Program-made: the position numbers and the translations under genes
Assembly: GCF_001194135.2 (NCBI RefSeq)
Contig: NC_068988.1
Location: 4,109,249 to 4,173,248, forward strand
From: Octopus bimaculoides
Taxonomy: Eukaryota
Length of the DNA stretch: 64,000 bases
Direction of reading: 5' to 3'
Shown: one piece after another, positions 12,461-64,000 of the stretch
How positions within the stretch are numbered: the first letter of the stretch is position 1
How the letters are laid out: each line of letters begins with the position of its first letter
The notes under the pieces: model-generated
What the model saw: only the letters and a program-made list of their open reading frames with translations
Database searches by the model: none
What the model was told of the DNA's origin: nothing

Positions 12461-12577
12461 ATAATTGATATTAAATAATGACACTAATTCATTTCATATG
12501 CAATGGAATGTAACTAAGCATCACAAAATATTTTGTCCTACAATCCACTGTTATATACACACGTCCTATAAATCCAT

Positions 12578-13345
12578 TCAGGTAGATGGCCCTGCTTGAT
12601 CTGTAGAAAAGGCATACTCTATAAGATGTACCCAGTGTAAGCTATGGACACATGAGAGTACAGCAATATCAAAGGAAGGTTAACGAGGAAGATAGTTTTT
12701 GTGTGTGGCAGATACACAGGTGCAATAAACACTGAAGATGTGCAGAAAACAGATTTCATCACATGCCAGGGTAAAGAACTAGAAGTAGTTGATAGCTTTT
12801 GTTACCTAGGTGACCAAATCAGTAGTCGGGGTGGATGCTCTGAGAGCATAGCTGCTAGAATATAAATAAGCTGGGCAAAGTTCAGAGACCTCCTACCTCT
12901 GCTGTTAAACAAAATGCCTCTCACTCAGAGAAAAAGGTAGACTGTACAATGCCTTGTTACACGGCGGTGAAACATGGGCTATGAGTGCTGAGGACATATG
13001 TAGGCTTGAAAGAAATGAAGCTAGTATGCTCCTCTGGATGTGTAATGTCTGTGTGTCAGTGTGCATACATGACAGAGTGTAAGTTCCCTGAGAGAAAAGT
13101 TGGACATAAGCATCAGATGTGGTGTGCAAGAGAGACAACTGCGCTTGTATGGTCATGTGATGTGTATGGACGAGGACATCATGATCATACCAGCTCCCAC
13201 TATTTGCTGTGAAGTGGTTGGCATTAGAAAGCTGTAGAAACTATGCAAAAACAGACATTACAGCTAGGCACAGTCCTCTAGCTTGGTAATTCCTGTAAAA
13301 CCATCTAACCCATACCAGCATTGAGAAAGGGACATTAAACAAGGA
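12578..13345 (+). mobile_element. RTE-clade LINE fragment (PHD-like finger, RT motif 7, C-terminal domain, 3' tail); pseudogenised
   Basis: Manual translation across frameshifts gives SGRWPCLICRKG..SIRCTQCKLWTH..SNIKGRLTRKIVFVCGRYTG..LEVVDSFCYLGDQISSRGGCSESIAARI*ISWAKFRDLLPLL, then the GGETWAM..RLERNEASML region typical of RTE ORFs. Confidence 0.9.
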
Positions 13346-14049
13346 CAATGATTATGTATCCATATAGTGTATGGAGTAATCTTACCAAATGTATTTATCT
13401 TCAGAATGTTGTTGTCCTCCTGTGCAAAATTAGAGTGACATAACAGATCAAAGAAAACTGAGCCAAGGAAAATAAATAAACATTTTACAATAAAAAAAAA
13501 TATCTCAACGAACAACCATTCTCATTCCAAAAAGGTTAATGCTTCCCCATCTATTAGAGTTGACACAACATTTCTGAAGCGTTGGTCATTTCAGTTGTTC
13601 CACATGTCTCACCACAGTAAATTGTATAGATCTCTGTCAGAAATCTATAATAACTGATAGTGTTTAGCAGCTGGAAAGAAACCAGTAAAACAGTATTGAT
13701 AATATCACATTTGAAAACAACACACAGTGACAACTACAAGATATATGAATGTAGTAGCATATTACTTTACACAGCTATTTTGGAATGTATTTTAATACCT
13801 TATGAACAGACATATTGTTGTTATTTGAGAACATTATTGGTTTTGTAAAGTGCTAATTGGTTTCCCTTTGCACAATTTTGTTTCATATGTTACATCATTT
13901 TCATTTTGTACTGGAGGCCAATGATGTTTACAAAATCATTGCATTTGGCAAGATTACCTGTATGTATTTATATATCATACATTAACTACCATCTCATCTC
14001 CTGGCACAAAGCCACATCCCTCTCTGCTGCAGCCCCACTTAGTGAAAGA

Positions 14050-27710: not shown

Positions 27711-30249
27711 AGATATGAGTTCAAACCCCGTACGAGTTGACTTGGTATTTCATTCTTCTGGTGCCTACACAATAGATACCAGTAAAATACTGGAGTCAAC
27801 ATAAACAATTATACTCCCGGTGCAAATTTGTGACTTCATGACAAAAGCAGAGACCAACATAATCAGATATTAATAGGGACACCAGTGTGGTAGAAATACT
27901 AAGGTGTCAGACTGAATGCCTTCTGGTATTGAGATCCATCCCTTTAATCACTCCCTGTGGAGTCGTATTCTTAGACTGATTCAATTTACCATATTCTTTC
28001 TTTGCAAATATGTTACTTTGAGCCAACCTAACAATTATTCAAGTATTTTTAGCTGGTCTTATACACTGAAAAAGTGTTACTAGTGGAAACTTTAAATCAT
28101 GAGTCTGAGTTGAAAACTCTGCCTTCCTCATTTGAACTTCACAACAGATGCTGATTCAAAATATCATTCTATGGAGAAGACTGACTGGAGTAAAATAAAA
28201 ATTTTAAAAAAAGAAACCTTTTTTTTTTTTATAACTGTACAATTCTTCGAAGTATTATCAGGTAGTAATGTTTTATTTCTAGTCACCATGATTTCAATAA
28301 CTCAGTCTTACCTGCAGGCATGAAATAGAAATCTATCTATGGAAAGATCTATTAAATCCATCACGAAAGAATATTCATTGAATGATGATAATGATGATGA
28401 TGATGATGATGATGACGATGGTGGTGGTGGTGGTAGTGGTGGTGGTAGTTGCTGATGGTTGATGGTTGTATTTAAGCTTGTAATAGTGGTGGTGATAGTG
28501 GTGGTAATTTGGTTGATTATTATGCTAATGGTCACACTGGTATTATTTTGATGCTGCTGCTGCTGATGATGATGATGATTATCCCATTTTATGTCTGCAG
28601 ATAAGATATTTGAATAATTGAAAAAAAAAAAAAAGTTATCTCTGCTGCATTGTTTAGCTTCATTCTTTTATTTGTGAAGACTGAAAACAAATAATATAAG
28701 TAATCTCTGTTATCAAATAAGACAGCAATGCTAATAGACAAAACACATTCATTCCTGCCAGACATTTTTCCACTACTCAAAATGGTTGAAATTTTCATTA
28801 ATACATTTGAAATCTATAATTTTCAGTTTAATTAAGGTATCTATTATTCAACATTAATATGGATGTTCTAATGTATTTTATTCATTATTATTATTACTAT
28901 AATAGAAATCATCATCATCATCATCATCATTTTATTACTGTCATTAGTTCTTTTTTTTATTCAGATTTAGTGATAGTGAAGAATTTGTAAATTCTGTTAT
29001 CTAACTAATACAATACCACACTGAGAGTAAAATAAAATAGATGCTATCGAAATGTAAAACCATTATGTAGGTTTTTACATTTATTATAGTATAACTTCTC
29101 TTAAATATTTCCAATTCCCTTAATTATCATAACCATATCTGTTTTACATTTTTACATCTATTTTCACATGTTGCTAGAATGCAGAAATGGTTAAACCAGA
29201 TATTTTATGTCAGACTGCATTTTTACATTATATCTAATTTATCTTAAAAAGAAAAGAGGTTTTTTTCCTCATTTTCTTTTTTTCTGTTGGTGGCACCTAT
29301 AGCTAAATAATGGCACTCTTTCCAAGTAGGGTATAATTTCTATTAGGTTCTGAATAAATATTCACTTTGCTTTCTTTTCTCTCAGTTTCAACTCCAAGTT
29401 CACTGACAATTAGAAGCGTAAAAGTGATTTACTGAATGTCGACCCAAGAGCTTCATCTTAATTAAATTGAGAATCTTGTCTCCAAAGATCGTTGCACCTG
29501 AATTCAGAACATTATGATTTCAAATATGAGGATGACCTATATAATTTATCAATGTGGACTACAAATATTTGATGAGTGCAGATAATCATTTGTAACTACA
29601 AAACTTCTATATTAATCTGAGGCTTATAAACAGCCAAGACTGTAACCTATTTCTCTCTTGTAATTATTCTGAATGAGAAAGGTTGTTTTCTTTTTTGTTT
29701 GTTTAGTTTACAGCTTTCTTTAGCAAGGTTGACAAGCATTGGTGATTCTGATTTGGAAGTGTGGTTAATATGATTATTGGGATTAATGCAACTAGGCTAT
29801 GTTTGGAAATTTGGTTGAGAGTTCAAAGCCTAAATGGCTTCTATGCAAGAGTCTGAAAGACTGTAGGCACAGGTATTTTGCTTTGACAAAAGCAGAAAAC
29901 TTAATTTCTGTTGGCTTCTAATGAATTTAAGTCATGATTGATGATTTTAAGGGACATCAACATTATCATCAATATTTTGAATCTATTTTCATGCTTTTTT
30001 TTGTTTGTTTCATTCTGCTGTGTATCACAGCACCAATTGTCTCTTTTGAAATTTCTTCTTACAAAAGATATGGCTTCCCCTGCCACATGCTCTGTACACC
30101 AACAGAGTATGACATTTTATCTGTCAATGCTCATTGCCCAATGATACCATTTGTCCATAACAGTTTAGTTGTCTTTCCTACACCATACTTAGTATTTTAG
30201 CATTTTTTTACTCCAGTCATCATACTTTTGTTACGATCACATCCATTAC

Positions 30250-30600
30250 TATTAATTATTTCAAGTAAGCAACAGAAGCCATCTCCAATATTTTGCATAC
30301 AAATGGAGCAGTTGATAGACTTAAATACATATCTATTTGGTTATCATTCCAGTAACAACTTCTGTGAGTTAACTGTATTTGAAATATTCATTAGTTCATT
30401 GTCAGTCTAATAGAAATACCCTTATAGAATACTAAAGGCTTCTTTTCTACTTCCTTACATATTGAGCACAGGTTCCTGCTTGGCGACGTACAGATTTTAT
30501 GTTTTTCATTACTAACTGCAACTTTGGTTTTTGTCATATACAACTTTAGGTTTTTGAGATTGTCTCTGTAGCTCTTCACCAGATTTTGCAATGGCATCTA
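30250..30600 (-). pseudogene. Very old RTE LINE relic (RT motif 6 / PHD start region)
   Basis: ORF 30391-30597 peptide KSYRDNLKNLKLYMTKTKVAVS..PSRNLCSICKEV resembles WKQNLKSKGFKVNLVKTKVLVS..PCSICR of the 61822 RTE; downstream DGFCCL resembles DSFCYL. Confidence 0.5.
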
Positions 30601-51100: not shown

Positions 51101-52421
51101 ACCTTTCAGTATCTCAAGATCTGAACATATAACCAATTCCTTTATCTTTCGTTGTTACCCTCCAGCTACAAAATACCACATTTCTCACTCAGCACTTATA
51201 TCTCATTTGCATATGATATTGTGCATGCACATGTACTTGCGTTAACACCTGGGTGTGTGCATGTGTGTATCAATAACCACACATATATGCATGAAAGTTT
51301 CCTAATGGAAATAGCTCCATGAATGGATAAATGTTAACCAAAAAGTCATTCAGTAAGTATAAGGTCTTTATTGAAATTTATTCCCAATTCTCTTATTGGG
51401 AATATTCTACAAACTGCAACCAAACAGATTAGTAAAATTGTGCATCCACTGAAAAATAGAAGTGCGCATCAGCTGCAAAATGTGATTGTAGATAAATTGT
51501 AAAATGAAATTGTATCAGCATCTAAACTGAGGATTGTGATTTGTTTCTGAATGTTGCAAATGAGAAAAGTAATTGGAAAAGTTATATCAGAATGTGATGG
51601 AGGGAAAAACCAATGGAGATTTTCTTTGTTGTCAATATGATGAATATGATGATGATAACAGTAAATCCGCAACAAATATCAGGATTTAGTTTTAAATTCT
51701 AATCTCTGTCGTTTTAGTAGATTGTTCTGAAACAAGATATGGAATTGTTATCACATATTCACCGGTAGCTTTTACAAGATATTACTGTTTGGATTAGAAG
51801 CTGGTGGAATGGAGAGAAATGACAGAAGACGAAATGCCATTCGGTATTTTGTTTCATCTCTTTACACTCAAATTCCATCAATGTTTGTTTTGTCTTTTAC
51901 TTCCAATATCTCTAAAATACACTTCACTCACATATCAACTTTGACTTCTCTTTCTAGCATTAACACATCGCTGCAAGTCCCTGATCAAACATATCTATGA
52001 GTAAAAACGTTCTAAATGAGACCCTCCTGTCTTTTTTCCCAGATACAGTGCACCCAAGACTACATTATCCCAATTATTTTATTCTTTTACTATTTTTAGT
52101 CATTGTACCATGGTCCTGCTGGGGCATCTTTAACAGTTTTAGGAGACCATATTACTGCCTGGTACTTATTTTAAAAATCTCTGTCAAACTTCTAAGTTAC
52201 TAGACAAAAGACTTATAGGCAACAATGCGCACAAAAAGACAGACGTATGTGTGTGTATATATATATATATNNNNNNNNNNNNNNNNNNNNNNNNNNNNNN
52301 NNNNNNNNNNNNNNNNNNNNNNNNNNNNNNNNNNNNNNNNNNNNNNNNNNNNNNNNNNNNNNNNNNNNNNNNNNNNNNTATATATATACACATATATCTA
52401 TCTATCTATCTATTATATCTC

Positions 52422-53760
52422 ATTAGGGAGAGAATTTGCTTAGATGAGATGCAGTTTGGTTTTGTGCCAGGTAGAAACACTACTGATGCTATATTCCTGG
52501 TTCAACAACTGCAAAAATACCTAGTTAAAGATAAACCCCTATACTTAGCTATTGTGGACTTGGAGAAAGCCTTTGACAGGGTCTCCCAATCCCTTATCTA
52601 GTGGGTGATACAGAAACTGGGGATAGACAAATGGTTAATAAGGGCTGTACGGGCCCTATACAGAGAGGCTGTTAGTAAGGTTAGGATCGGCAATGAGTAT
52701 TGTGAAGAATTTCGGGTAGAAGTAGGGGTCCACGAAGGATCAGCCATCAGTCCTCTTTTATTCATCATAGCCCTCCAGACAATAACAGAGGAATTCAAGA
52801 CGGGTTGCCCCTGGGAGCTCCTCTATGCTGATAACTTTGCTCTAATTCCTGAGTCACTATCAGAACTAGAGAAGAAATTTCAGGTGTAGAAGCAAGGTTT
52901 AGAATCTACCCCAGCTGGTGACAAAGGGTCTCTCGCTCAGAGTAAAAGGTAGATTGTACGGTGCATGTGTGCGAACTGCCATGCATCACGGCAGTGAAAC
53001 ATGGGCCATTATGCATAGACTCGAAAGAAATGAAGCTGGCATGATCTGCTGGATGTGTAATATCAGTGTGCACACACGACAGAATGTAAGCACCCTGAGA
53101 AATGTTGGACATAAGAAGCATCGGATGTGGCATGCAAGAGAGATGTTTACGCTGGTATAGTCATGTACTACGGATGGATGAGGAGAGCTGCATGAAGAAA
53201 TGCCACTCCCAAACAGTTGAAGGAATCTGGGGTAGAGGTAGACACAGGAAGACATGGAATGAGGTGGTGAAGCATGACCTTCGAACGTTGGGCCTCACAG
53301 AGGCAATGACAAAAGACCAAGACCTCTGGAGATATGCTGTGACTGTGAAGACCCAACAAAAAAAGTAAGTTCATGGCTGTATCCTACACCAGTTTCGCAT
53401 AACCAGCCCCAGCCCATTCAAAAGTACCTTGGATCATAGGGTGACCTGCTGTGCTTGAGGAGACCTATTGAGTCAAGTACATCAACATCAAAATGAAAAG
53501 GAAATTGTAGTTGCGATACCTGTGCTGGTGGCACGTAAAAGGCACCATCCAAACATGGCCAATGCCAGCACCACTATAACTGGCTTCCGTGCAGGTGGCA
53601 CATAAAAAGCACCAGCCAGTCATGGCCGTTGCCAGTCTCCTCTGGCCCTTGTGCCAGTGGCACGTAAAAAGCACCCACTACACTCATGGAGTGGTTGGCA
53701 TTAGGAAGGGTATCCAGCTGTAGAAACAATGTCACATCAGACTGGAGCCTGGTGCAGCCA
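52422..53760 (+). mobile_element. RTE-clade LINE, 5'-truncated, internally deleted; RT core, C-terminus and 3' UTR
   Basis: LDEMQFGFVPGRNTTDAIF..AIVDLEKAFDRV..GVHEGSAISPLLF..ELLYADNFAL (RT motifs 2-5), then KGRLYGACVRTAMHHGSETWA..RLRW-like..GRGRHRKTWNEVVKHDL; stop at 53368; UTR carries ~65-bp units and the family B tail. Confidence 0.95.
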
Positions 53761-53837
53761 CCTGGGTATCTTATGCATTGTACTGGCATGTGTGCTTTTA
53801 TGTGGCACTGATATGAATACACACACACACAAACACA

Positions 53838-58519: not shown

Positions 58520-60519
58520 AGCTGAGTTTTATTTATTCATTTGTCATTTATTTGTTCCATCTTCCTTCTTGTTTCTTGAAAGTTTATTCCGGCACTAATG
58601 TGACCATCTTTATCTCTTTTTCCCAACTACACCCATCCACATATAAAGTGTGGTAGCCATGTACCCACTTTTATAGTAAGACAACTATACTTGTCTCTGT
58701 CTCATAATTTAGCCTTTCAACACTGGCCACCTCTCCCTGCAAAAACTATCCTCCCCACCCCTTAGTAGTAGGAGCTTTCTCCTTTTCCTCTCTCCCTGTT
58801 CTTTTTCTGCCTTGCAAGTTACTCAGCAACCTCTCTAATGCTGATGACATGAAAAAGCTAGCCATAGAAACCATGCCAAAGCATGCACACAAGCTCGTCA
58901 CAGCCCTGCAACTCACTGGATCCTGGCAAACCATCCCACCAATGCCAACATAGAAAACAGACGTTATAACACATGGTACATTTTAACCCAGTGCTCATTG
59001 TACAAATGTACCACGTGCCTACACTATCTTACATGTCTTTTTGGCAATAATTCTTTTGAAATAGGTCAAAGGAGTAAGTGTTCATAACCTTCACAAAGCT
59101 CTCTCTGAAGTTGGTGAAAGTGCTGTAGCCAACACTCAACTGTTGTTATCACTGAACCCTAATTTGCACTGATTCATCGGGCTTATGTAACAAAGCTGAA
59201 AGATTTAAAGCACCAAATGAATGAATGGAAGTGAGGAGACCATAAATAAGAAATCAAAACATTTACTCCTAATTACAAGACTAAGTTTATAATATGAATT
59301 TTGACAACTTAGAAGAATTTGGTTTAAGATTGATGACTTTGAACTTTAAATTGCAACAACAGATACCGAACTTAATTCGATAATCAATTCAAGCACAAAG
59401 GAAATGAAGTTCTAGAATAGTGCTGCTTATTTTAAGTTGTGTCTGTATTATTGAAGATATGGAGAGAGATATTCAAATCAAAACAATCAGGAAGCACCCT
59501 CCAGGAATCACTAAGGATTCTATGTCTTTTACTTTTTTTTCCGTAAAAATGTATCCATATTTTGTTTTTAAATTTGGATATTTTCCTCTGTTCAGGATGA
59601 ATACATTTTAGCAGAGATAGCTTGTCTGTTGTAAACTATTTTAGCATGAAACTGCCATCAGTGCACATTTTTACTGCTAAGTAGACATAGCAGAATAAGC
59701 CTTATGTAAATAAATGTTGTGATACTTTAATTGTTCAAACTGCTGCATAGGGAGATTTCATTAAACATTTATACAACTTCAGATATTAAACTTATCTGGA
59801 AAATCAGAACTGTCATTTCTAGGAAACAAATATGACAAAAAAAAAAGAGACGTAAGAAGGAAATTAAACAGATTTAATACTGATTTCAAAATTCCAGTCG
59901 TGTTCTATATAAATTGATATTTTAAAATATTTATTGATACGCCACAAACATCAAAGGAGTGGGAAAACATTTAAATGAAACATATTCCTATATTTTGATA
60001 ATGTTGATAATGAGGATGATGAAGATGGCAATGATGGTGATAAACAAGAAGCATAACGAGTGAGAGGAGATTTAAGTTAGATGCGAAAAATAAATTATTT
60101 AACTTCAAATATTACTATTTTGAATCAGAAAAGATAAAGTTTTTAATTTTACTTTGAAATCCAAAAATGACCACACCATTCTAATAGATATTGACAGAGT
60201 GTTCAATAATCTGTTATCAGGACTTTTCTCCTATTTTTTTCCTCATAATTATGGCTTTCTGTTAACAGGAAACTACATTGGAAACAAGAATGATATACTA
60301 GAATTATTTCTATGGAATTATTGAAAGAAATTTAATTAAAATGAACAATGAATCAGGATTAGGTAATTTTAATTCTTGGATTTCTTCCTGGGTAATCAGT
60401 ATATAAAGACAAAAGATGGGTGTCGTTCTTGTCTTTGAATAAACCCTGAATGACAATGGAAACACTTTATTGTAAAAACATAGATATATATATAAATATA
60501 TATATACAATATAAATACA

Positions 60520-60748
60520 TTATTTACATTATTTACATTTGACGGATATTTGTCCTCATCTTTGTTGTTAACACAATGTTTCGGCTGATATACCCTCCAG
60601 CCTTCGTCAGGTGTCTTGGGGAATATCAGGAGGGTATATCAGCCGAAACGTTGTGTTAACAATAAACAAGATGAGGACAAATATCCGTCAAATGTAAATA
60701 ATGTAAATAATGTAAATAATTCCTCATCTCTTAAATATAGAACTGTAT
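60520..60748. mobile_element. Penelope-type terminal-repeat fold-back insertion with apparent TSD
   Basis: About 80-bp arms (60519-60598 versus 60629-60711), 30-nt spacer; AATATAAATACA repeated at 60508-60519 and 60749-60760. Confidence 0.7.
60570..60615 (-). ncRNA. Minimal type I hammerhead ribozyme (Penelope-associated type)
   Basis: GACAC-CUGACGA-A-GGCUG(GAGGGUAUAU)CAGCC-GAAAC-AUU-GUGUU: intact core, 5-bp stem II, 5-bp stem I. The opposite arm shows the palindromic GAAACGUU version of stem III. Confidence 0.7.
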
Positions 60749-60929: not shown

Positions 60930-61822
60930 AGTTACCTGTTATCTTTGGTGAACCTGTTATCTTGTGGGTTCCAATACACCAGCAGGAGTTTCCTGAAATG
61001 CAAGCATGTTCCAGAGACCTCTGTTCTAGAGCTATTAGGGTCAGCCAGCACCTTAGCTTCATAGATGACTCTCTTGGTTTTGCAGTTACCTCTCACTGGG
61101 CATCTGTTGTGGTCTCTGCTTGCGCATCCTGCCTCTACTTGTGGTCTAGGGGTGCTAACTAGAATACTCTCAATATTGGGGGCACAGCTAAAAGAGACCC
61201 TAAGGTTGTGCTTGCTGAAAATGCGTGCATACCTATGTGAATGTGTGAAATGTTTATCTATTAACTTAAGGAATATCCTACTTAGAGACACTTCTATGTT
61301 AAGAGAGAAGTGATAGTGGTGGTGGTGGTGATGGGGGGGGGGGCTAACCAAATGATATTTCTGTGACACTTCCTTCTATGGATGTTGGGGCCCGGCATGT
61401 AGGAGATGCGGTTCTTAAATCCACTAGCAGGTAAGGCCTCATTATAATTGGGGGTTGCTGCATCAAAAATCTCTTGGTTGGAGGAAAGGTTCATGATCCT
61501 CTTGCTAACACCCTTCACCAGGTTTTTGAACACAATGGGTGGGTGACAGGAGGCTGTGTTGATGTACGCTAACCTCTCATTTGGCTTAGGGTACGGCCTG
61601 TATCTACCAGAGCCTAAGACATCCACAGTGACGAGATTTGTCTCGATAGTAATTTTCAGTTCCATAGAGATTTTTGATGCAACATCCCCCTACTATAACA
61701 AGGCCTTAGCTGCTAGGACATTTAGGGACTGCATCTCTTATATGCTGGGCCCCAACATCCATAGAAGGAAGAGTCGCAGAAATATCATTTGACTTGTTCC
61801 CAACCCCACTACTACCAACACC
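60930..61822 (-). mobile_element. Penelope-like element relic (RT thumb, linker, GIY-YIG endonuclease) with inverted duplicated segment
   Basis: LKITIETNL..GRYRPYPKPNERLAYINTASCHPPIVFKNL..KRIMNLSSNQEIF..YNEAL..SGF..RNIIW..PP; FLKLIDKHF..IFSKHNLRVSFSCAPN..C...CPVRGNC..RVIYEAKV..(C)IGT. These match PLE ORF motifs. Confidence 0.9.
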
Positions 61823-62723
61823 ATGTGTGGAAGCAAAACTTGAAATCAAAGGGCTTTAAGGTTAACTTAGTCAAGACTAAGGTTCTAGTTAGTAAGGAAA
61901 CTGACAGAATCCTTCCCGTATCAGCTAAACGACCCTGCTCAATATGTAGGTAAGTTGTAGGCAGGAATTCCATATAGTGTACCCAGTGCAAGCTATGGTC
62001 ACACAAAAGGTGCAGTGGAATAATAGAAAGACGATCAAGGAAGTAGTGTTTTTATGTGGAAGATGCACAGGAGCCATAAAACCTACAGATAGTCAGGAAA
62101 TTGATTTTCTCAAATGCTCCAGCTGGTCTTTAGAGGTAATGGATCATTTCTGCTACCTAGGGGACCTACTTAGCAGTAGAAAAGGATGTAATTGCTACAA
62201 TAAGAATAGGATGGTGAAAATTCAAAGAGCTTTTACCTCTGTTGGCAATCAAAGGTCTCTCTCTCTTTCCAAGTGAAAGGAAGATTGCATGATGCAGGTA
62301 CATGAATAGCAATGCTACATGGTAGTGAGACATGGGCCCTGAATGCAGAAGGTATGTAAAGGTTAGAGAGGAATGAAGCTAGTATGTTCTGCTGGACGTG
62401 CACTGTCAGTGCACATGTGCAACAGAGCACCAATGTATCAAGAGAAAAGTCAAGCATAAAAGGAATAAGATGCAGTGTGCAAGAGATTGATAGTGGTGTT
62501 GGTGCCACATTAAAAGCACCGGTTCTGGCACTACATATAAACTACTCAGTAAACCCTGTAAAGTAATTGGTGTTAAGAGAGGTATCCAGCCATACAAATC
62601 ATGCCAGAACAGACAATGGAGCCTGGTGTGCCCCCCNNNNNNNNNNTCCCGTTAAGCCATCCATCACATGCTTGCATGGAAAACAGACATTAAATGATGA
62701 TGATGATGATGATGATGATGATT

Positions 62724-62778
<55 letters not shown>
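61822..62778 (+). mobile_element. RTE-clade LINE fragment (RT motif 6, PHD-like finger, motif 7, C-terminus, B2 tail, (GAT)n)
   Basis: VWKQNLKSKGFKVNLVKTKVLVS..RPCSICR*VVGRNSI*CTQCKLWSHKRCS..VVFLCGRCTG..LEVMDHFCYLGD..GSETWALN..LERNEASM. Confidence 0.9.
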
Positions 62779-62779
<1 letters not shown>

Positions 62780-64000
62780 ATACATACACACAAACACATA
62801 TAGCATTAGATTGTTCTTAATATTAAAATATTTCCATTATTCACGAAGTGAAAGAAAATAGTTCAAAATATGATTAAAAGGACAAGAAAGATGCCAAATA
62901 AATACTTTTGAGATTCTCAAAGTGGTGGCCATAACCTGGGAAGATTTTATATTTGTGAATTAAGTTCTTTAAATTGTGCCATCTTTCAATCAACAAAGCA
63001 GATTAATAGTCAGCTTAAGAACTGAAGAAATATAAGAATAATTACAAGATATTTTTCAAAAAATAATCGGTTGGGATTTAGAACAATAAATTTCAGATTT
63101 TATTAAAACATGTCAAAATTTTTACCTCATGTCATAAGAATAAAAGATATGAAAGAAAGTATAGTCTGTAGATGATATTTTCTATTGTTGATTCTATGAG
63201 GAGATGATTTTATATCTGACAATAACATTTCATTCAATTGTTTGCTCCTTCGAGCAAAGATATTGCCTTTAATTTCATATAATTATTCATGGAAGCTGAA
63301 AGAATATAATTAGAACAGAAATGTTTTTAATGATACAGATGAATAATTTTACATTTATTATCCACAAAGACACATTATAAGCGATAGAAGAGTATTCCCC
63401 TTTCTTCATCTTCATTAGGGATTTCAGTAGAAGGTTTAGGCAAAATTGTGACAACTATTAATTTTTGATATGAAATGATTTTTTTTTCTTCTCTACAGGT
63501 AACATAATGATAAAATGTTGAGACAGTTTATTCTATTCTTAGTCTTTTTTCATTCAAACCCATTATTTTGTGCTGTTGCTTTTCAATTCATTTCCCCTAA
63601 TTATGTATTTTGGTCCTGTTTTCCAAAATATATTTCTTCAGTAATTAGTCTGTCTTGATTAGAAATTTATGACACATTTCTGAATCTACACCACAACAAA
63701 TAAAAGCCTTAAGACCCAAACAATTAAAATATAATCAATAAAGGCAAAAAAAAAAAGGAAAGTTTCTGGAATTTGTGATATGTGGACAGACGAACCAAAG
63801 AATTTTGTCCTTGAAATGTGTTAAAAACGTTTTGAGTGATGATTATTAAGAACACTTGAGATATCAATTATGTTCTCTTTGATAGACATGACCTTCAGAA
63901 GTAAACACAATTTGATAACTGCTGTACAATAAAACACGACTCAGTGACAGTTAGACATTACTAATGAGCAGACATGATCAAAAATGCATATAAAAGGAAG

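What the first reader, a model, noticed from the sequence alone, without database searches (positions are those of the whole stretch)
61936..62066. PHD-type (C4HC3) zinc finger inserted inside the reverse transcriptase of RTE LINEs
Seen: between RT motif 6 (GFKVNLVKTKV) and motif 7 (FCYLGD), the 61.8k copy reads C-SI-C-x10-C-TQ-C-KLWS-H-KR-C..C-GR-C, i.e. Cys4-His-Cys3 spacing. The 12.6k copy has the same insert (12593-12715, last Cys mutated to Tyr), and the faint 30.4k relic shows its start (LCSIC). Established: C4HC3 is the PHD signature, and many PHD fingers read histone H3 tails; most LINE RTs have only a short linker here. Inference: this lineage may tether target-primed reverse transcription to chromatin marks. 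Similar inserts may already be described in other metazoan RTE families, so novelty is not assured.
Basis: partly seen in the sequence, partly recalled or inferred. Interest (0 to 1): 0.72.

Follow-up and report, generated by a model that had tools for sequence, protein, structure and literature searches.

The report
PHD zinc finger inside LINE reverse transcriptase
The window holds dead fragments of an RTE-like jumping gene whose reverse transcriptase carries a genuine, strongly conserved PHD-type zinc finger, at the spot where a related element (R2) touches its target DNA; I found no paper that describes it and its ligand is unknown.

Summary
At 61936-62066 (+) all eight Cys4-His-Cys3 ligands are present with spacing 2/10/2/4/2/14/2, between RT motif 6 (61852-61884) and motif 7 (62148-62165). 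The copy is dead: two stop codons and one frameshift lie inside the finger. Pfam PHD scores above its cut-off.

Intact relatives show this is a family trait. Of 237 homologs, 221 keep the pattern at the same position. A motif6-PHD-motif7 profile finds 1,527 clusters (50% identity) at E<=1e-10. Full-length relatives are single ORFs of about 1,050 aa (APE, RT, PHD, no C-terminal CCHC) with microsatellite tails, which is RTE-like. They occur in molluscs, a cnidarian and amphioxus.

AlphaFold models fold the insert confidently, and Foldseek returns only PHD fingers. The closest solved relatives by sequence are H3K4me2/3 readers, Pygopus first, and the cage tryptophan is invariant. However, the finger is strongly basic (mean net charge +5.5, Pygopus -6) and lacks the acidic pocket residues.

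The insertion site is the one where R2's "6a" loop contacts upstream target DNA. I therefore read the finger as a target-engagement module. Whether it binds a histone tail or nucleic acid is unresolved. No description turned up in eight full-text searches.

The parts
61816..62485 (+). Decayed, 5'-truncated ORF fragment of an RTE-like LINE, running from just before RT motif 6 to the thumb and C-terminal part. The C-terminus is cut short by a deletion into the 3'UTR.
   Evidence: tblastn with intact relatives P0001, P0002, P0013 and P0130; six-frame translation
61852..61884 (+). RT motif 6 (GFKVNLVKTKV)
   Evidence: Translation; aligns with the invariant G-L-R-V-N-x-x-K-T-K of relatives
61936..62066 (+). 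PHD-type C4HC3 zinc finger. All 8 ligands are intact, but it has 2 stop codons (61951-53, 61975-77) and a 1-nt deletion near 62035-37.
   Evidence: Codon-level reading; Pfam PF00628 at 27.4-28.2 bits against cut-off 24
62148..62165 (+). RT motif 7 (FCYLGD, primer-grip region)
   Evidence: Translation in the shifted frame; F-C-Y-L-G-D is invariant in relatives
62486..62780 (+). 3'UTR block shared with the other copies, an assembly gap (N, 62638-62647), and the terminal (GAT)n microsatellite tail (about 62700-62780)
   Evidence: Sequence; alignment of the three 3' ends
12572..13365 (+). Second 5'-truncated copy. It starts in the linker before the finger, and its ORF remnant, 3'UTR block and short tail end near 13365.
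   Evidence: tblastn; sequence; 3' alignment
12593..12715 (+). PHD finger of the second copy, degenerate: ligands 6 and 8 are Cys->Tyr, with an 8-nt and a 1-nt deletion
   Evidence: Pfam only 13 bits
52419..53770 (+). Third copy, following an N gap. It has RT motifs 1-5, thumb, C-terminus and 3'UTR, but an internal deletion near 52905 removes motif 6, the PHD and motif 7.
   Evidence: tblastn; translation; Pfam RVT_1 only
30203..30570 (-). Faint relic. Motif 6 and the first Cys pair of the finger (LCSIC) are at 30570-30448. A weak colinear motif-7-like stretch is at 30316-30203.
   Evidence: tblastn E=0.002 and E=5; translation

Best explanation
What it is (shown). The window carries four dead, 5'-truncated or internally deleted copies of an RTE-like LINE. 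The copies look cephalopod, because the best named relative is from Octopus vulgaris. In this LINE lineage a 44-residue PHD-fold zinc finger is built into the reverse transcriptase. It starts 21 residues after the KTK of motif 6 and ends about 27 residues before FCYLGD of motif 7. It is as conserved as the thumb domain.

How it most likely works (inferred). The finger sits at the same place in the chain as the '6a' insertion of the R2 reverse transcriptase. In the R2 cryo-EM structure, 6a contacts the target DNA upstream of the nick. I therefore read the finger as a target-engagement module used during target-primed reverse transcription. It would hold the enzyme on the nucleosomal target next to the primer grip.

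The ligand I favour is the nucleosome as a whole. A half-cage (invariant Trp, usually an aromatic partner, Val/Ser floor) would take an H3 tail lysine, probably methylated K4. The strongly basic surface would lie on DNA, much as PWWP readers combine a cage with a DNA-binding face.

In the window itself nothing is functional; the copies are fossils.
For: Identity and conservation:
- All ligands are present at the reported coordinates, and Pfam PHD is above its cut-off.
- 221 of 237 homologs keep C-x2-C-x10/11-C-x2-C-x4-H-x2-C-x13-19-C-x2-C at a fixed distance from motifs 6 and 7. Of these, 173 share the modal 10/4/14 spacing.
- Within those 173, G-3, P0, G7, N11, W21 and all ligands are invariant, and Y/F sits two residues before C7 in all 173.
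- 1,527 clusters at 50% identity match the motif6-PHD-motif7 profile at E<=1e-10.
- Mean pairwise identity is 0.61 for the finger, 0.61 for motif 7 plus thumb and 0.56 for the APE domain.

Fold:
- The AF2 model of the finger alone has pLDDT 82.9. All top 50 Foldseek PDB hits are PHD fingers, with TMq 0.47-0.70.
- In the full-length model, residues 781-830 score 89-93. The whole protein matches human L1 ORF2p at E=4e-37, and also R2.

Reader-like features:
- A profile search of the PDB puts Pygopus first (E=1e-7). ALFIN, BPTF, KDM5B, PHF13/23/2, DIDO1, PHF8, MLL1, CFP1 and TAF3 follow.
- The Pygo1 K4me2 cage is W366/Y341/D352 with a V350/A356 floor (PMC2726290). These align to our W21, residue -1 (F/Y/W in 175 of 207), V8 and S12.

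Position: the R2 '6a' insertion between motifs 6 and 7 binds the upstream target motif (PMC10499050).
Against: - No binding data exist for any LINE PHD (PMC4120745).
- The acidic residues around the Pygopus pockets (E349, D352, D355, E360) align to Gly, a 2-residue gap, Asn and Ser/Thr/Gly/Pro.
- Net charge of the finger is +5.5 +/- 1.9, against -6 for the aligned Pygo1/2 region. This is unusual for a binder of the basic H3 tail.
- The second cage position is His, Asp, Asn, Ser, Cys or Leu in 32 of 207 fingers.
- The geometry relative to target DNA rests on an analogy with R2, a different LINE group with a different endonuclease. I could not obtain model coordinates to measure it.
- The invariant Trp could instead be buried against the RT.
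Confidence: 0.45

Rival explanations
1. The finger binds nucleic acid only and reads no histone. It would be a basic zinc module that grips upstream target DNA or the RNA:cDNA duplex. That is the job done by the basic 6a loop in R2. It might also stand in for the C-terminal CCHC zinc knuckle that these elements lack.
For: - Mean net charge is +5.5, with conserved basic positions (R5, K24, K/R25, R32, R43, and R49 and R54 just after the finger).
- The acidic pocket residues of histone readers are absent.
- R2's 6a loop at the same site (deletion construct DGHRKK) contacts target DNA.
- None of 39 full-length relatives has a CCHC after the RT. In R2 and L1 that knuckle handles target strands.
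Against: - Every close solved relative is a histone-tail reader, none a DNA binder.
- The surface Trp typical of methyl-lysine cages is invariant in 173 of 173 fingers with the modal spacing. The residues tolerated at the partner position (F, Y, W, H, D, N) are those typical of lysine pockets.
Confidence: 0.3
2. The finger has a structural or protein-docking role. It would be a zinc-stabilised brace of the palm/primer-grip region, or a platform for a host factor or for multimerisation, with no direct contact to the target.
For: - The flanking linkers are modelled as confidently as the finger (86-92). Single-residue bridges at 771 and 831 suggest a fixed stalk rather than a flexible tether.
- Pygopus PHD itself uses its rear face for a protein partner, BCL9.
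Against: - A brace does not explain conservation of reader-type pocket positions or the strong positive charge.
- From memory, and untested here, other RTE elements such as BovB function with a short linker at this site.
Confidence: 0.2
3. The cysteine pattern arose by chance in a decayed pseudogene, or it is a RING or C1 domain.
For: - The window copy is riddled with stops.
- There are weak sub-threshold hits to C1_1, C1_2 and zf-RING_16.
Against: - The pattern is conserved in more than 200 intact homologs and about 1,500 clusters.
- PHD is the only Pfam model above its cut-off.
- All top Foldseek hits are PHD fingers.
Confidence: 0.01

Closest known systems
RTE-clade LINEs (RTE-1, BovB, RTE-X and relatives)
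   Same: - A single ORF of about 1,050 aa with an N-terminal APE endonuclease and a central RT.
- A short C-terminus without a CCHC knuckle, and an element length of about 3.3-3.8 kb.
- 3' ends made of short tandem repeats: (GAT)n in the window, (ATG)n and (TAAC)n in intact relatives.
- The octopus LINEs reported as active are RTE-class (PMC9115989).
   Different: - A 44-residue PHD finger plus linkers, about 90 residues in all, lies between motifs 6 and 7.
- From memory, BovB has only about 20 residues there; this was not tested here.
- Clade placement by RT phylogeny against named references could not be done with these tools.
R2 retrotransposon 'RT6a' insertion (Bombyx mori R2, PDB 8gh6)
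   Same: It is a lineage-specific insertion in the same place, between RT motifs 6 and 7. In R2 it contacts the upstream target DNA during TPRT (PMC10499050).
   Different: - R2's 6a is a short basic loop, not a zinc-finger domain.
- R2 uses a restriction-like endonuclease and is site-specific.
- There is no sequence homology.
Pygopus PHD finger and other H3K4me2/3-reader PHDs (BPTF, ING, TAF3, PHF2/8/13/23, DIDO1)
   Same: - They are the best sequence-profile matches, and the best fold matches include ARID5, ING5, BPTF, TAF3 and Pygo2.
- Shared 'Y-P-C-x-x-C ... I-x-C ... W-x-H-x-x-C-x-G' signature, the cage Trp, and the floor positions V and S/A.
   Different: - The readers are acidic, free-standing domains of chromatin proteins.
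- Here the acidic pocket residues are missing, the net charge is about +5.5, loop 1 is two residues shorter, and the domain is embedded in a polymerase.
PHD domains of CR1/L2-type LINEs (ORF1p, or the N-terminus of ORF2p)
   Same: A PHD finger carried by a non-LTR retrotransposon. A role in targeting has been proposed but never tested (PMC4120745; PMC3708506).
   Different: - Those fingers sit in ORF1p or ahead of the endonuclease, not inside the RT, and belong to the Jockey superfamily, not to RTE.
- The authors describe ORF2 architecture as highly constrained.
- Homology between the two sets of fingers was not tested.
Reader-guided integration in LTR elements (chromovirus chromodomain; Copia MBD)
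   Same: The concept is the same: a retroelement enzyme fused to a chromatin-reader domain that biases insertion sites (PMC6673714).
   Different: These are different element classes that use an integrase and different reader domains. Function has been shown for them but not here.

Membership tests
PHD finger (Pfam PF00628) | Cys4-His-Cys3 ligand order with canonical spacing | tested here: met
   Window copy 61936-62066 has spacing 2/10/2/4/2/14/2. 221 of 237 homologs keep the pattern.
PHD finger (Pfam PF00628) | Profile HMM score above the curated cut-off (24 bits) | tested here: met
   61.8k copy scores 27.4-28.2 bits and intact relatives 24.8-33.1 bits. The 12.6k copy fails at 13 bits because two ligands and part of loop 1 are lost.
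PHD finger (Pfam PF00628) | Aromatic residue two positions before the seventh ligand | tested here: met
   Y or F in 173 of 173 fingers with the modal spacing. In the window copy it is F-L-C.
PHD finger (Pfam PF00628) | PHD fold (two-stranded sheet, interleaved zinc sites) | tested here: met
   Predicted only. AF2 pLDDT is 82.9 for the finger alone and 89-93 in context. The top 50 Foldseek PDB hits are all PHD fingers.
PHD finger (Pfam PF00628) | Binds two zinc ions | not testable with these tools
   Needs purified protein (metal analysis or a structure).
H3K4me2/3-reader subclass of PHD fingers | Cage tryptophan two residues before the His ligand | tested here: met
   W21 is invariant (173 of 173). 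It aligns to Pygo1 W366, which is essential for binding. The window copy reads L-W-S-H.
H3K4me2/3-reader subclass of PHD fingers | Second aromatic cage wall (Pygo1 Y341 equivalent) | tested here: inconclusive
   F, Y or W in 175 of 207 fingers; H, D, N, S, C or L in the rest. The 61.8k window copy has Arg and the 12.6k copy has Trp.
H3K4me2/3-reader subclass of PHD fingers | Acidic residues that anchor the H3 tail (Pygo1 D352, E360 and the EVND motif), giving an acidic binding face | tested here: not met
   The aligned positions are Gly, a gap, Asn and Ser/Thr/Gly/Pro. Net charge is +5.5 against -6.
H3K4me2/3-reader subclass of PHD fingers | Measured binding to methylated H3K4 peptide | not testable with these tools
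   Requires peptide arrays, ITC or NMR.
RTE clade of non-LTR retrotransposons | Single ORF with APE endonuclease and RT, and no ORF1 | tested here: met
   Intact relatives are 1,034-1,066 aa on contigs of 3.4-4 kb. P0130 has APE at 23-251, RVT_1 at 560-764 and PHD at 780-823. In L003 at most about 275 nt lies upstream of each ORF.
RTE clade of non-LTR retrotransposons | No cysteine-rich/CCHC domain after the RT | tested here: met
   0 of 39 full-length relatives have one. About 185 aa follow motif 7.
RTE clade of non-LTR retrotransposons | 3' end of short tandem repeats instead of poly(A) | tested here: met
   (GAT)n at 62700-62780; (ATG)n at the stop codon in L002; (TAAC)n in L003.
RTE clade of non-LTR retrotransposons | RT groups with reference RTE elements in a phylogeny | not tested
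   No named reference RTE sequences were reachable. The RTE-2_OV sequence is not in the supplement text that is held.
R2-type RT6a insertion | Lineage-specific insertion between RT motifs 6 and 7 | tested here: met
   The position was verified against motifs 6 and 7. The R2 description is in PMC10499050. This is a positional analogy only; the two insertions are not homologous.

The most novel reading that the evidence does not exclude
An endonuclease-type LINE carries a histone-mark reader built into its reverse transcriptase at the target-DNA-facing 6a site. Priming of reverse transcription would then be gated by the modification state of the nucleosome at the nick, for example H3K4 methylation.
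Probability: 0.3. Interest if true: 0.8.

Novelty: new variant of a known kind. Interest (0 to 1): 0.58.

Why it matters
How APE-type LINEs choose where to insert beyond a short nick-site motif is an open question. ORF2 architecture is usually described as rigid (PMC4120745).

Here a large, widespread animal LINE lineage has a folded reader-type domain grafted into the RT next to the primer grip. It sits at the one site shown structurally, in R2, to touch target DNA.

If the finger reads nucleosomes, it gives a simple, testable handle on chromatin-guided LINE integration. It may also help explain the distribution of RTE elements in octopus, bivalve, cnidarian and amphioxus genomes. If it binds DNA, it shows how an RTE lineage without a C-terminal zinc knuckle solved target handling. 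Either outcome is relevant to engineering LINE or R2 enzymes for gene insertion.

For the window itself the consequence is modest, because the copies are dead fragments.

Tried and rejected
- **RING and C1 readings.** Only sub-threshold Pfam hits were found.
- **Mercenaria locus L001.** I fetched it to see a full element, but the copy is 5'-truncated with no APE. Full-length relatives came from the third protein search instead.
- **RTE-2_OV sequence.** I looked for the published octopus RTE-2_OV sequence to test clade membership and to see whether its reported 'C2H2 Znf' is this finger. It is not in the supplement text that is held.
- **L1 TPRT structure paper.** I searched it for the motif 6-7 region, chromatin and the palm. 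Nothing usable was found.
- **Kapitonov & Jurka 2003.** The paper is not held.
- **Literature.** Eight full-text searches for a description of a PHD inside an RTE or LINE RT found none (one search was for Pygopus).
- **Neighbouring ORF 61294-61665 (-).** A Pfam scan gave no hit.
- **Geometry.** I could not measure the distance from the finger to the active site or to DNA, because the structure tool returns no coordinates.
- **PHD-less RTE elements.** Their absence of the finger (for example BovB) rests on memory only.

Full report
**Observation**

The stretch 61936-62066 on the + strand begins with the TGC of the first Cys and ends with the TGC of the eighth ligand. It reads C-SI-C-R*VVGRNSI*-C-TQ-C-KLWS-H-KR-C-SGIIERR(frameshift)KEVVFL-C-GR-C. 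All eight ligands survive. The spacing is 2/10/2/4/2/14/2.

The copy is nonetheless dead. There are stops at 61951-53 and 61975-77, and a 1-nt deletion near 62035-37. RT motif 6 (GFKVNLVKTKV) lies at 61852-61884 and motif 7 (FCYLGD) at 62148-62165.

With stops masked and the frame mended only for scoring, Pfam's PHD model gives 27.4-28.2 bits against a cut-off of 24, E about 2e-6. C1 and RING models stay below their cut-offs.

Both the sixth and the eighth ligands are Cys->Tyr, loop 1 has lost 8 nt, and one further base is missing. The 30.4k relic is weak (E=0.002 within the window) but colinear.

A fourth copy at 52419-53365 has lost motif 6, the finger and motif 7 through an internal deletion.

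**What the elements are**

The three better copies share a 3'UTR block, and the 61.8k copy ends in a (GAT)n tail.

Protein searches found few hits with the decayed query (12 hits).

Full-length relatives are single ORFs of 1,034-1,066 aa on contigs of 3.4-4 kb. In P0130 the Exo_endo_phos (APE) domain is at 23-251, RVT_1 at 560-764 and PHD at 780-823. None of the 39 full-length proteins has a CCHC knuckle after the RT. Intact copies end in microsatellites: (ATG)n directly at the stop codon in L002 and (TAAC)n in L003.

These are the hallmarks of the RTE group. Placement by RT phylogeny against named references could not be done here.

Named hosts are Octopus vulgaris, Mercenaria mercenaria, Hydractinia symbiolongicarpus and two Branchiostoma species. 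Some entries filed under bacterial names are evidently animal DNA contamination.

**The insert is a family trait under constraint**

Of 237 fetched homologs, 221 contain C-x2-C-x10/11-C-x2-C-x4-H-x2-C-x13-19-C-x2-C. In almost all of them the pattern starts 21 residues after KTK of motif 6 and ends about 27 residues before FCYLGD. Of the 16 that do not match, six are a variant with H-x4-C spacing. The others are truncated or mutated.

In the 173 fingers with the commonest spacing, G-3, P0, G7, N11, W21 and all ligands are invariant. Y or F sits two residues before C7, which is the classical PHD hallmark.

A profile running from motif 6 to motif 7 was searched against 1.84 billion cluster representatives. 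It finds 1,527 clusters at E<=1e-10 and 59 at E<=1e-30.

In an alignment of 50 full-length proteins, mean pairwise identity is:
- RT core: 0.73
- the finger: 0.61
- motif 7 plus thumb: 0.61
- APE domain: 0.56
- C-terminus: 0.42

**Fold**

AlphaFold2 folds the finger alone at mean pLDDT 82.9. All fifty best Foldseek matches in the PDB are PHD fingers, including ARID5, ING5, BPTF, TAF3, ING4 and Pygo2. TM-scores run from 0.47 to 0.70 and are 0.59-0.70 for the first ten. Foldseek probabilities fall from 1.00 to 0.63 down the list. The E-values are weak, as expected for 54 residues.

In the full-length model (mean pLDDT 81.7), residues 781-830 score 89-93 and the linkers are equally confident. The whole model matches human LINE-1 ORF2p (E=4e-37), R2 proteins, APE nucleases and group II intron RTs.

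**What the finger resembles**

A profile of 60 fingers searched against all PDB sequences puts Pygopus PHD first (E=1e-7). It is followed by ALFIN-like, BPTF, KDM5B, PHF13, PHF23, PHF2, DIDO1, Set3, PHF8, MLL1, CFP1 and TAF3, nearly all of which read H3K4me2/3.

In human Pygo1 the K4me2 cage has walls W366, Y341 and D352 and a floor of V350 and A356. The mutation W366E abolishes binding (PMC2726290). The HMM alignment maps these residues as follows:
- W366 to our invariant W21
- Y341 to the residue before Pro-Cys1, which is F, Y or W in 175 of 207 unique fingers
- V350 to V8
- A356 to S12

That is the case for a histone reader.

The case against is just as concrete. The acidic residues that surround the pockets in Pygopus (E349, D352, D355, E360) align to Gly, a two-residue gap, Asn and Ser/Thr/Gly/Pro. 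The finger carries a mean net charge of +5.5 (range 0 to +11), against -6 for the aligned part of Pygo1/2. Conserved basic positions include R5, K24, K/R25, R32 and R43, and R49 and R54 just after the finger.

**Where it sits**

[quoted passage not shown] The PHD finger occupies that same position in the chain, immediately before the primer-grip motif.

By analogy, and this step is an inference, the finger should face the target DNA or chromatin during priming. The same paper notes that the CCHC knuckle of R2 and L1 separates target strands. The lineage studied here has no such knuckle.

**Mechanism**

I commit to a target-engagement role for the finger during TPRT. My preferred ligand is the nucleosome, with the half-cage on an H3 lysine and the basic face on DNA (confidence about 0.45). 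The main rival is a purely nucleic-acid-binding module (0.3). A structural or protein-docking role comes next (0.2). Chance or a different domain family is excluded.

**Novelty**

PHD fingers are known in LINEs, but in ORF1p of CR1/L2-type elements or ahead of the endonuclease (PMC4120745; PMC3708506). No functional study of any of them exists, and ORF2 is described as highly constrained. The general idea that retroelement PHDs may guide integration has been voiced before (PMC6673714).

Eight full-text searches found no description of a PHD inside an RTE or LINE reverse transcriptase. The octopus RTE paper mentions only a 'C2H2' zinc finger, whose position I could not check. Public databases do carry automatic RVT_1 + PHD annotations for these proteins.

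I rate this a new variant of a known kind, of moderate to good interest. For this window the copies are fossils.

Noticed in passing
window 52419-53770 (+): A fourth copy of the same LINE, just after an N gap. It has RT motifs 1-5, thumb, C-terminus and 3'UTR. An internal deletion near 52905 joins 'KQGLES' to 'LPQLVTKGLSL' and removes motif 6, the PHD finger and motif 7.
   Followed up: partly
window 61317-61474 and 61666-61823: A 158-nt inverted repeat (82% complementary) lies directly upstream of the 61.8k LINE fragment. It carries a 123-aa minus-strand ORF (61294-61665, 'YRPYPKPNERLAYINTASCHPP...') with no Pfam hit. This is probably a relic of another retroelement.
   Followed up: partly
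window 60516-60714: A nested hairpin: 54-nt arms at 94% and 46-nt arms at 89% complementarity. It looks like a MITE or a foldback element.
   Followed up: no
window 62486-62640, 13190-13365, 53366-53770: The three copies share a 3'UTR block (GTGGTTGGCATTAGGAAGGGTATCCAGCTGTAGAAAC...GGAGCCTGGTG). A similar 'TTAGGAAGGGCATCCAGTTGTAAAA' lies just upstream of the ORF start in the unrelated locus L002 (3940-3970). This suggests a SINE-like or tail module shared across hosts.
   Followed up: no
relatives P0077, P0139, P0150, P0164, P0168, P0170: A sub-lineage has two extra residues between the His and the sixth ligand ('WVHGKKKCSG', H-x4-C). This spacing is unusual for PHD fingers.
   Followed up: no
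relatives P0002, P0052, P0057, P0194: Fragments of this animal LINE are deposited under bacterial names: a Herbaspirillum MAG, Salmonella enterica Derby, and Candidatus Thiodiazotropha ex Lucinoma. These are most likely host or sample DNA contamination in bacterial assemblies.
   Followed up: no
locus L003 205-6740: Two intact full-length copies (1,048 and 1,071 aa) lie tail to tail on a marine-metagenome contig, separated only by their 3'UTRs and (TAAC)n tails.
   Followed up: no
PMC9115989 (octopus RTE-2_OV): The paper describes a 'C2H2 zinc finger' in RTE-2_OV and swaps the N- and C-terminal labels of the domains. That finger may be the PHD insert described here.
   Followed up: partly
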